Of a stretch of 64,000 nt of DNA, positions 10,768-63,803 are shown one piece after another. Position 1 is the first letter of the stretch, and each line of letters begins with the position of its first letter. This stretch comes from Fimbriosthenelais zetlandica (taxonomy: Eukaryota). The stretch spans positions 60,326,001 through 60,390,000 of the forward strand of contig OZ365109.1 of the NCBI GenBank assembly GCA_977030845.1. Direction: 5' to 3'. Below the pieces are notes generated by a model that worked only from the letters and a program-made list of their open reading frames with translations, had not been told where the DNA came from and did not search any database. The position numbers and the translations under genes are program-made.

Positions 10768-10831
10768 ATGAGGATTTTCGCAGGAACCGTTCTCCTACTG
10801 GCTCTTTTTGCAGTGCCGGGTCAAGGCCAAA
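10768..10831 (+). CDS. First coding exon: signal peptide [21 protein letters not shown]
   Basis: Acceptor ctttcag at 10764, ATG at 10768, hydrophobic core with small residues at the cleavage site, and a gtaagt donor at 10832 (phase 1). The A+GG junction gives Arg in frame with the 19887 exon. Not in the ORF track. Confidence 0.8.

Positions 10832-63803: not shown

What the first reader, a model, noticed from the sequence alone, without database searches (positions are those of the whole stretch)
10768..63803. Gene for a micrometre-scale vWA-collagen-EGF protein, a candidate annelid giant cuticle collagen
Seen in the sequence: the exons assemble into SP - 6 vWA - beta domain - ~5,150-aa collagen - >=4 EGF, over 6,770 aa and still open at the window end. 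At about 0.286 nm per residue the helix would be about 1.5 micrometres, versus about 0.3 for type I collagen. Established knowledge: annelid cuticle collagens were described biochemically and by electron microscopy as very long rods. From my recollection these were about 1.5 micrometres in Riftia and about 2.4 in Alvinella, some with a terminal globular domain, and were characterised mainly from peptides. Inference: this may be a full gene model for that class, with the vWA cluster as the terminal globule. The architecture matches no vertebrate collagen type I know; collagen VI has many vWAs but a helix of only about 335 aa.
Basis: partly seen in the sequence, partly recalled or inferred. Interest (0 to 1): 0.95.

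Follow-up and report, generated by a model that had tools for sequence, protein, structure and literature searches.

The report
Giant membrane-anchored threonine-rich collagen gene
This is a real, conserved gene for a collagen about 1.5 micrometres long, of the kind described in annelid worm cuticles; relatives show it ends in a membrane anchor with a conserved tail inside the cell, which no described collagen of this orientation has.

Summary
On the + strand, 34 splice-compatible exons give 6,761 aa with no stop. They encode a signal-peptide candidate, six vWA domains (Pfam), a 173-aa all-beta domain with no Pfam match, and a 5,139-aa collagenous region. That region holds 1,622 uninterrupted Gly-X-Y triplets, with Thr in 66% of Y positions. 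Four EGF-like exons follow, and the frame is still open at 63803.

A second species carries the same gene. Its splice phases are homologous, and 18 consecutive collagen exons have identical length (4,488 aa, zero indels, 73% identity). A spliced transcript contig from a third species joins collagen, EGF modules, a cbEGF, a transmembrane helix and a ~110-aa tail ending -DATRL in one ORF.

So the protein is most likely a type I membrane collagen.

Helix length (~1.47 µm), Thr-rich Y positions and an N-terminal globule fit the Riftia-type cuticle collagen. Tissue, organism, peptide identity and the 5' splice chain (vWA to beta to helix) remain inferred. Giant annelid collagen predictions were already published in 2025, without architecture.

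Verdict: new variant of a known kind, interest about 0.72. The same scan noted other giant and membrane-anchored collagens elsewhere in this genome.

The parts
10768..10831 (+). Exon 1: candidate start codon and signal peptide ([20 protein letters not shown]), phase-1 donor AAA|gtaagt
   Evidence: Not confirmed in the orthologue within 10 kb upstream. Species C has no in-frame ATG before vWA1, so an upstream exon is required there.
19887..20513 (+). Exon 2: vWA1
   Evidence: Pfam VWA E 8e-7. 53% and 41% identical to colinear exons in L001 and L003.
22227..22940 (+). Exon 3: vWA2 plus Pro/Thr/Gly-rich linker
   Evidence: Pfam VWA E 1.5e-11. 59% and 43% identical in the orthologues.
24196..24765 (+). 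Exon 4: vWA3 (alternative donor at 24711 not excluded)
   Evidence: Pfam VWA E 3.5e-18. Splice candidates.
26424..27005 (+). Exon 5: vWA4
   Evidence: Pfam VWA E 6e-23.
27799..28359 (+). Exon 6: vWA5 (alternative donor at 28341 not excluded)
   Evidence: Pfam VWA E 2e-23.
29254..29835 (+). Exon 7: vWA6; the donor gtgagtcc is the same in species C
   Evidence: Pfam VWA E 3e-17. Orthologous ORFs P0006 (59%) and P0012 (45%). Donor comparison.
31268..31566 (+). Exon 8: first half of the conserved beta-rich domain; phase-1 acceptor, phase-0 donor
   Evidence: No Pfam hit. 59% identical in species C with the same phases. AF2 gives all strands at low confidence.
40116..40338 (+). Exon 9: second half of the beta-rich domain; phase-0 acceptor, phase-1 donor
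   Evidence: 72% identical in species C. AF2 gives six strands, pLDDT 66. No fold match.
41394..41483 (+). Exon 10: start of the collagenous region
   Evidence: The homologous exon in species C uses a GC donor.
41678..42604 (+). Exon 11: collagen with the only interruptions; more Pro in Y here
42752..44380 (+). Exon 12: collagen, 1,629 nt
   Evidence: Same length in species C, 70% aa identity ungapped.
44549..45457 (+). Exon 13: collagen
   Evidence: Same length in species C, 67%.
45580..46020 (+). Exon 14: collagen
   Evidence: Same length in species C, 79%.
46147..46578 (+). Exon 15: collagen
   Evidence: Same length in species C, 74%.
46682..47086 (+). Exon 16: collagen
   Evidence: Same length in species C, 69%.
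47254..47838 (+). Exon 17: collagen
   Evidence: Same length in species C, 72%.
48078..48626 (+). Exon 18: collagen
   Evidence: Same length in species C, 75%.
48784..48999 (+). Exon 19: collagen
   Evidence: Same length in species C, 78%.
49212..49616 (+). Exon 20: collagen
   Evidence: Same length in species C, 70%.
49777..49938 (+). Exon 21: collagen
   Evidence: Same length in species C, 65%.
50266..50751 (+). Exon 22: collagen
   Evidence: Same length in species C, 69%.
50999..51340 (+). Exon 23: collagen
   Evidence: Same length in species C, 75%.
51527..51715 (+). Exon 24: collagen
   Evidence: Same length in species C, 73%.
51943..52788 (+). Exon 25: collagen
   Evidence: Same length in species C, 76%.
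52982..53773 (+). Exon 26: collagen; holds the only Lys of the helix (aa 4476)
   Evidence: Same length in species C, 71%. Lys count.
53931..56099 (+). Exon 27: collagen, the largest exon (2,169 nt)
   Evidence: Same length in species C, 75.5%.
56603..57844 (+). Exon 28: collagen
   Evidence: Same length in species C, 75%. Its 3' part is covered by the species B transcript.
57965..59629 (+). Exon 29: collagen
   Evidence: Same length in species C, 76%. The junctions on both sides are matched without a gap by the species B transcript.
59915..60886 (+). Exon 30: last collagen exon, ending [15 protein letters not shown]
   Evidence: The junction ...GFAGDLA|EFEATLC is identical in the species B transcript.
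62236..62397 (+). Exon 31: atypical six-Cys EGF-like module next to the helix
   Evidence: No Pfam hit. 60% identical in species C. Present in the species B transcript.
62643..62816 (+). Exon 32: EGF-like 2
   Evidence: Pfam FXa_inhibition E 4e-6. 61% identical in species C.
63433..63567 (+). Exon 33: EGF-like 3 (this exon is absent from the species B transcript)
   Evidence: Pfam FXa_inhibition E 5e-9. Alignment.
63666..63803 (+). Exon 34: EGF-like 4; phase-1 donor, the gene runs on past the window end
   Evidence: Pfam FXa_inhibition, cEGF and EGF_LRP2. In species B, C and D it is followed by a cbEGF exon and a TM-plus-tail exon.

Best explanation
One gene encodes a roughly 6,950-aa chain of a giant, threonine-rich collagen of the annelid cuticle type, made as a type I membrane protein.

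Shown:
- 34 phase-compatible exons give SP candidate, six vWA domains without a MIDAS motif, a conserved 173-aa all-beta domain, and a 5,139-aa collagenous region. That region has 1,622 uninterrupted triplets, Y = Thr 66%, one Lys, no Cys and pI about 12. Four EGF-like modules follow.
- The same gene in a second species has identical exon lengths and splice phases.
- In a third species a spliced transcript joins helix, EGFs, cbEGF, TM helix and a conserved cytoplasmic tail ending -DATRL.

Inferred mechanism:
- Three chains tethered in the ER membrane are brought into register by the membrane-proximal EGF/TM region.
- The helix nucleates at the conserved C-terminal GPPGPG clamp and zips towards the N-terminus.
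- Y-position Thr is O-galactosylated and stabilises the helix in place of hydroxyproline, as published for Riftia cuticle collagen.
- The tail ends in a class I PDZ-ligand-like motif (S/T-X-L, as in CFTR -DTRL). It directs or holds the molecule at the apical, microvillar membrane of epidermal cells.
- From there the 1.5-µm rod with its vWA/beta globule is built into the cuticle, either staying anchored or after shedding.
- The exact conservation of helix length suggests that length and register matter for assembly.
For: - Exon model without stops, and domain calls.
- Composition. Absence of Cys and Lys, 460-kDa helix.
- Not a repeat artefact.
- Orthologous loci with six colinear vWA exons: L001 and L003.
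- Beta domain 59-72% identical, with the same phase-0 intron.
- 18 collagen exons of identical length. X-position identity is 50.5% in register against 5-17% when shifted.
- Identical count of 4,866 uninterrupted residues in both species.
- Spliced transcript contig L014: a 1,615-aa ORF running helix, EGF, cbEGF, TM, tail and stop. It is 79.7% identical to the window's helix without a gap. Its last exon and 3'UTR are 99.8% identical to genomic L015, which has an intron where L014 has the cbEGF.
- TM and tail invariant blocks in three species.
- Phase-1 junctions through to the stop codon in species C.
- Literature: a very long helix plus globular domain is typical of annelid cuticle collagens, and glycosylated Thr of Riftia. 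Lengths up to 2.4 µm.
Against: - No transcript evidence covers the 5' half (SP to vWA1, vWA6 to beta, beta to helix).
- The SP exon was not found in the orthologue.
- The TM and tail exons lie outside the window and are known only from relatives.
- There are no expression or tissue data, and no sequencing run was listed.
- The organism was not identified.
- Published cuticle collagens were described as extractable rods with no mention of a membrane anchor, and no furin-type site lies near the helix ends.
- The same genome is noted to hold other giant vWA-collagens that could be the bulk cuticle collagen.
- The PDZ-ligand and glycosylation steps are inference only.
Confidence: 0.6

Rival explanations
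1. It is the same single gene and the same membrane-anchored giant collagen. However, it is not the bulk cuticle fibre collagen. It is a permanent tether that links epidermal cells or microvilli to the cuticle or another apical matrix. In function it would resemble Drosophila Dumpy or C. elegans MUA-3/MUP-4.
For: - TM helix and a highly conserved cytoplasmic tail, with invariant blocks and C-terminal -DATRL in three species.
- No furin-type cleavage site near the helix ends.
- EGF stalk next to the membrane.
- Other giant vWA-collagens are noted in the same genome.
Against: - The helix composition (Thr in Y) and the length of about 1.47 µm match what is published or recalled for the extractable Riftia-type cuticle collagen.
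- A near-absence of Lys and Cys fits an easily extractable fibre protein.
- Shedding by a non-furin protease cannot be excluded.
Confidence: 0.25
2. There are two genes. A secreted six-vWA protein ends after vWA6, and a separate beta-collagen-EGF-TM gene starts between 29.8 and 31.3 kb.
For: - No transcript spans vWA6 to beta.
- Read-through of the vWA6 donor meets a stop after 9 codons, so a short terminal form is possible.
- The vWA domains are less conserved (37-59%) than the beta domain, helix and tail.
Against: - The beta-a exon starts in phase 1 at a strong acceptor and has no ATG or signal peptide.
- No signal-peptide-like first exon lies between vWA6 and beta-a.
- The vWA6 donor (gtgagtcc) and the beta-a acceptor are conserved in position and phase in species C.
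- Order and strand are conserved in species C across 66 kb.
Confidence: 0.1
3. It is an artefact or a dead gene: either an assembly expansion of a repetitive collagen, or a pseudogene.
For: The Alvinella authors raise misassembly as a general worry for giant collagens.
Against: - There is no stop in 20.3 kb of spliced frame.
- Internal DNA repeats are short and diverged.
- A second species has a residue-for-residue orthologue with diverged introns.
- A third species expresses it as spliced RNA.
Confidence: 0.02

Closest known systems
Riftia pachyptila cuticle collagen (Gaill et al. 1991, 1995; Mann et al. 1996), known from electron microscopy and peptides
   Same: - Very long triple helix with a globular domain at one end.
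- Threonine, not hydroxyproline, dominates the Y positions (title of Mann 1996).
   Different: - No gene, domain architecture or membrane anchor has been described for it.
- Identity with its peptides was not tested here, because the paper is not held.
- The organism of the window is unknown.
Giant collagen predictions in Alvinella pompejana (8,859 aa), Paralvinella spp. and Eisenia andrei (PMC12403961)
   Same: Annelid gene or transcript predictions with many thousands of Gly-X-Y residues. At 0.286 nm per residue the Alvinella length fits the ~2.4 µm reported for superlong cuticle collagens.
   Different: - Those have Pro in 21-33% of Y positions, against 4.6% here with Thr at 66%.
- Their domain architecture was not described.
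- That paper states that siboglinid predictions do not reach such lengths.
- Homology was not tested here, because the sequences could not be reached.
Collagen VI alpha3/alpha5/alpha6-like chains
   Same: Several vWA domains N-terminal to a collagen helix. These are the commonest collagen-bearing hits of the vWA6 search.
   Different: - Only 21-25% identity.
- Helix of about 330 aa with Cys, and vWA domains on both sides.
- No EGF, TM or tail.
Membrane collagens of type II orientation (MACITs XIII, XVII, XXIII, XXV) and nematode cuticle collagens shed by furin/BLI-4 (PMC10538796)
   Same: A collagen made as a membrane-anchored precursor. In nematodes this is a cuticle collagen.
   Different: - Opposite topology: an N-terminal signal anchor there, a C-terminal TM after a cleavable signal peptide here.
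- Much shorter, interrupted helices.
- A dibasic shedding site is present there and not found here.
Drosophila Dumpy and C. elegans MUA-3/MUP-4 (PMC2150771, PMC2150763)
   Same: Very large type I membrane proteins of the apical matrix with EGF modules (and vWA in MUA-3/MUP-4) that tie epidermis to cuticle. Dumpy is from my own knowledge.
   Different: - No collagen helix.
- No sequence relationship was tested.
Collagen VII (anchoring fibrils)
   Same: vWA domains flanking a long helix. It is the longest vertebrate helix, about 1,530 aa (own knowledge).
   Different: - Interrupted helix about one third as long.
- FN3 repeats.
- Secreted, with no EGF or TM.

Membership tests
Annelid cuticle collagen (biochemical class) | Triple helix longer than 1 µm | tested here: met
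   5,139 collagenous residues, 1,622 of the triplets uninterrupted. This gives about 1.47 µm at 0.286 nm per residue.
Annelid cuticle collagen (biochemical class) | Globular domain at one end of the rod | tested here: met
   Six vWA domains plus the beta domain lie N-terminal to the helix, about 153 kDa per chain. This is a sequence-level prediction only.
Annelid cuticle collagen (biochemical class) | Thr dominates the Y positions (Riftia type) and is galactosylated | tested here: inconclusive
   Thr is 65.8% of Y positions here and 67.6% in the orthologue. Glycosylation cannot be read from DNA.
Annelid cuticle collagen (biochemical class) | Made by epidermis and located in the cuticle | not testable with these tools
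   No sequencing run was listed for two stretches. A transcript exists in a related species, but its tissue is unknown.
Annelid cuticle collagen (biochemical class) | Matches published cuticle-collagen peptide sequences | not tested
   Mann et al. 1996 is not in the held library.
Annelid cuticle collagen (biochemical class) | Source organism is an annelid | not testable with these tools
   The origin is withheld.
Collagen VI family | Short (~335 aa) Cys-containing helix with vWA domains on both sides | tested here: not met
   The helix is 5,139 aa without Cys, and EGF modules rather than vWA lie C-terminal.
Fibrillar collagens | About 1,014-aa helix, COLFI C-propeptide, 54-bp-type phase-0 exons | tested here: not met
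   There is no COLFI domain. Exons are 162-2,169 nt, and all helix introns are phase 1 in a split Gly codon.
Type II membrane collagens (MACIT, nematode cuticle collagens) | N-terminal signal anchor and a furin site before the helix | tested here: not met
   The TM helix is C-terminal in species B, C and D. The only R-X-[KR]-R matches lie inside vWA5 and the beta domain.
Type I membrane protein | N-terminal signal peptide, single C-terminal TM helix, stop-transfer basic residues, cytoplasmic tail | tested here: inconclusive
   The TM helix (Kyte-Doolittle 19-residue mean 3.1), RRWR and the tail are shown in relatives. The window ends before these exons, and the signal-peptide exon is only a candidate.

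The most novel reading that the evidence does not exclude
The annelid cuticle's micrometre-long collagen is made as a type I transmembrane precursor. This orientation is unknown among described collagens. The membrane-proximal EGF/TM region sets chain register for a C-to-N zip of about 5,100 residues. A conserved PDZ-ligand-like tail holds the molecule on epidermal microvilli, so that the cell surface positions and orients each 1.5-µm rod in the cuticle lattice. Helix length is held to the exact triplet across species because it sets that lattice.
Probability: 0.4. Interest if true: 0.88.

Novelty: new variant of a known kind. Interest (0 to 1): 0.72.

Why it matters
Annelid cuticle collagens have been known since the 1970s-1990s as the longest collagen molecules, but only from electron microscopy, amino-acid composition and peptides. 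One paper (PMC2443231) even doubted that single helices of that length exist.

A complete, cross-species gene model makes several old questions directly testable:
- It shows that one polypeptide can carry 1,622 uninterrupted triplets.
- It identifies the terminal globule as a vWA cluster plus an unnamed conserved domain.
- It suggests that the molecule starts life anchored in the membrane by its C-terminus.
- It opens the question of how such a helix is registered and folded.
- It opens the question of how Thr glycosylation replaces hydroxyproline.
- It opens the question of how epidermal cells lay down the orthogonal cuticle lattice.

The zero-indel conservation of helix length over 4,488 residues is also a striking constraint for collagen biophysics.

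Tried and rejected
- Sequencing runs: none was listed for a collagen exon or for the vWA5-6 stretch. Read laying could therefore not be used, and the splice chain of the window itself is untested by reads.
- Homologue search with the beta-a exon found nothing, because of the word and length filters.
- The exhaustive search with vWA6 gave generic multi-vWA and collagen VI-like proteins, and only ORF-sized orthologues. No annotated giant vWA-collagen appeared.
- The region search with the C-terminal part of the transcript gave only fibrillin-like EGF proteins.
- Two apparent exon fusions in TBLASTN were rejected as read-through of intron or polypyrimidine sequence. One was beta-b running into collagen, which contains a stop. 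The other was the signal peptide running into vWA1.
- The signal-peptide exon was not found within 10 kb upstream in species C.
- Cluster look-up gave only another start of the same genomic ORF.
- Beta-domain fold:
  - Atlas look-alikes were weak. They gave nothing for beta-a. For beta-b they gave Lectin_like, PHR and DUF4082 leads at 0.87-0.89 with few shared features.
  - AF2 on each half gave all-beta models at pLDDT 45 and 66.
  - Foldseek against PDB and AFDB clusters had no match with E at or below 0.001.
  - I did not fold the spliced 173-aa domain, because it has no contiguous reference and I did not type it.
- Mann et al. 1996 is not held. The supplements of the Alvinella paper say nothing on the giant collagen's domains.
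- Literature searches for a gene-level description of annelid cuticle collagen or a type I membrane collagen found none in the held library.

Full report
**What is in the window**

The + strand between 10.8 and 63.8 kb carries G+C-rich open stretches in A+T-rich DNA.
- Six open stretches at 19.8-29.9 kb each match Pfam VWA (E 1e-6 to 2e-23). Aligned to each other they are only about 20% identical. None keeps the DxSxS MIDAS motif.
- From 41.4 to 60.9 kb there are 24 Gly-X-Y runs totalling about 5,176 aa.
- At 62.2-63.8 kb lie four Cys-rich EGF-like exons.
- Searching for GT-AG sites by phase gives a unique consistent chain. Every exon is symmetric phase 1. In the helix the intron always splits a Gly codon as G|gt...ag|GN. 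The one exception is a phase-0 intron of 8.5 kb that splits a 173-aa domain without a Pfam match (31268-31566 plus 40116-40338).
- The 34 exons give 20,284 nt and 6,761 aa with no stop, still open at 63803.

**The helix**

- The collagenous region is aa 1414-6552 (5,139 aa; 460 kDa; about 1.47 µm at 0.286 nm per residue).
- After four interruptions in the first 270 residues it runs as 1,622 uninterrupted triplets.
- Y is Thr in 65.8% of triplets and Pro in 4.6%. X is Pro 24%, Arg 18%, Ala 15%, Ser 15% and Phe 7%.
- The helix has one Lys, no Cys, no His and a pI near 12. The first Cys of the whole protein is at aa 6565.
- It ends in GPIGPPGPG, the only Pro-Pro clamp. This is where a C-to-N folding collagen would nucleate (inference from fibrillar collagens).
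- The DNA is not a recent or collapsed repeat. Self-BLASTN finds only matches of 280 bp or less at 72-85% identity.

**Relatives**

An exhaustive search with vWA6 found no annotated giant vWA-collagen. The collagen-bearing hits are collagen VI-like, with about 330 aa of Gly-X-Y and 21-25% identity. It did find ORF-sized orthologues at 59%, 45% and 36% identity.

Their contigs show the same locus in other species:
- L001 (species B, Logan ERR14368248) has six colinear vWA exons at 53-59% identity.
- A 3.96-Mb ENA contig (species C) has them at 37-45%.

I walked the species C contig for 73 kb and found the whole gene:
- Beta-a at 59% identity, a 15-kb intron, then beta-b at 72%.
- Homologous splice sites with the same phases, including the phase-0 intron.
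- Collagen exons of the same sizes.
- Eighteen consecutive collagen exons (13,464 nt, 4,488 aa) of exactly equal length in the two species. The ungapped identity is 73%.
- X-position identity of 50.5% in register against 5-17% after shifting. Introns differ freely in length.
- An uninterrupted run of 4,866 residues in both species.

This is strong evidence for real, selected coding exons and for a constraint on exact helix length.

**The C-terminus, beyond the window**

In species C the four EGF-like exons are followed by two more exons. The first is a cbEGF exon (DIDEC...). The last encodes a stalk, a 23-25-residue hydrophobic helix, RRWRR, a tail of about 110 aa and a stop codon. All junctions are phase 1.

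A search with that last exon found homologues at 64-69% identity in two more samples:
- One (species D, L013) is a 10-kb genomic contig. It carries helix end, EGF1-4, cbEGF and the TM exon in order.
- The other (L014, Logan ERR14707600, species B) is decisive. It holds a single 1,615-aa ORF. That ORF runs through 1,258 aa of Gly-X-Thr collagen, the junction ...GFAGDLA|EFEATLC..., EGF modules, the cbEGF, the TM helix and the tail to -DATRL-stop, then 1.6 kb of 3'UTR.

Further points on L014:
- Its collagen is 79.7% identical to the window's model, ungapped when anchored at the helix end. Shifted by three residues the identity is 54%. This matches the window's predicted junctions of exons 28-29, 29-30, 30-31 and 31-32.
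- Its last 2,078 nt are 99.8% identical to genomic contig L015 of the same species. L015 has a polypyrimidine-AG intron end where L014 has the cbEGF. L014 is therefore a spliced transcript.
- The TM segment, a DSELGSNLGTEMGMD block and the C-terminal DATRL are invariant in three species. They are better conserved than the vWA domains.

**What is shown and what is inferred**

Shown:
- The architecture in the window.
- Its conservation in other species.
- That helix, EGF, TM and tail sit on one mRNA in a close relative.

Inferred with good support (about 0.85-0.9):
- That the vWA cluster, beta domain and helix are one gene. Beta-a starts in phase 1 without an ATG or signal peptide. No signal-peptide-like first exon lies between vWA6 and beta-a. 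The vWA6 donor and the beta-a acceptor are conserved.
- That this window's gene also ends in the TM and tail exons.

Weakly supported:
- The signal-peptide exon at 10768-10831. It has a good h-region and a strong phase-1 donor. I did not find its counterpart within 10 kb in species C, although species C needs an upstream exon because there is no in-frame ATG before vWA1.

**Function**

Three features fit the annelid cuticle collagen class as summarised in PMC11766948, which describes globular domains, a very long triple helix and glycosylated Thr in Riftia. Lengths up to 2.4 µm are reported in PMC2443231.
- A rod of about 1.5 µm.
- Thr in Y.
- A terminal globule.

By the same arithmetic the 8,859-aa Alvinella protein of PMC12403961 would fit the roughly 2.4-µm class.

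The near-absence of Lys and Cys fits a collagen that is not lysyl-oxidase cross-linked (inference). The 460-kDa helix chain is close to the ~470 kDa that I recall for Nereis cuticle collagen chains.

The membrane anchor was not expected. I propose that it serves chain registration and nucleation at the ER membrane. I also propose that it serves apical, microvillar placement through the S/T-X-L tail, which resembles a class I PDZ ligand such as CFTR -DTRL (own knowledge). The rod would then either be shed or remain tethered. Nematode cuticle collagens and MACITs give a precedent for membrane-anchored collagen precursors, but in the opposite orientation (PMC10538796).

The main rival is that this is a permanent cuticle-to-cell tether, like Dumpy or MUA-3, rather than the bulk fibre collagen. 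The scan's notes list other giant vWA-collagens in this genome. They also list short membrane-anchored collagens with cbEGF stalks, one of them 62 kb upstream. I did not check these.

**Novelty**

Giant collagen predictions in annelids are already published (PMC12403961), so the existence of such genes is not new. That paper gives no architecture, reports Pro-rich rather than Thr-rich Y positions, and says siboglinid predictions do not reach this length.

As far as my searches reach, the following are undescribed:
- The six-vWA plus unnamed beta domain head.
- The all-phase-1 exon design.
- The exact length conservation.
- The type I membrane anchor with a conserved tail.

I rate it a new variant of a known kind.

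**Limits**

- The organism is unknown.
- There are no reads for this genome and no tissue data.
- The beta domain's fold is unresolved. Half-domain AF2 models are all-beta but of low confidence, with no fold match. The spliced domain could not be submitted because it has no contiguous reference.
- Species C shows one apparent frame break in exon 11, and I left it as it is.

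Noticed in passing
L014:2-4846 versus window 63433-63567: The species B transcript lacks exactly the third EGF-like exon, which is present in the window and in species C and D. All exons are phase 1-1, so skipping keeps the frame. This could be alternative splicing or a lineage loss.
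   Followed up: partly
window 42752-60886 (spliced helix): There is short-range periodicity of 4 triplets in X and Y. There is also a weak long-range period of about 49 triplets (~147 residues, ~42 nm) in non-Thr Y positions (power 11.5 times the mean) and in charged residues (6.7 times). This agrees roughly with another first-stage note on a ~150-residue period.
   Followed up: partly
window 10768-60886 (protein aa 1-6564); Lys at about 53572: There is no cysteine in the first 6,564 residues, including all six vWA domains and the beta domain. The helix has a single Lys (aa 4476) and a pI near 12.
   Followed up: partly
window 19855-19886; L001 about 890-925; L012 about 9925-9980: The sequence just upstream of the vWA1 acceptor (cagcatgttctgcctgtttt...) is conserved in three species. 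In the window and species B it reads as an in-frame MFCLFSLVI, which could be an alternative start or signal peptide. Species C has no ATG there, so it is more likely a conserved branch and polypyrimidine element.
   Followed up: partly
species C contig, stitched coordinates 29425 (L007): The exon homologous to window exon 10 appears to use a GC-AG intron (AAG|gcaaga) where the window has a GT donor.
   Followed up: no
species C contig, stitched coordinates 31539-31545 (L007): There is an apparent +1 frame break of 7 nt inside the exon homologous to window exon 11, at the site of a helix interruption in the window. It may be an assembly error or a real difference. I left it as it is.
   Followed up: no
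L006 (ENA ERZ23495071, metagenome scaffold, 1,237 nt): A scaffold labelled as metagenome carries a vWA6-like ORF 36% identical to the window's. It is probably animal DNA in an environmental sample and a more distant member of the family.
   Followed up: no
L004 versus L003: A second contig of the same ENA assembly carries a near-identical copy of the six-vWA region, probably the other haplotype.
   Followed up: no
window 8030-8527, minus strand: A 165-aa ORF lies on the opposite strand upstream of the gene. Its translation looks low-complexity, and it was not examined further.
   Followed up: no
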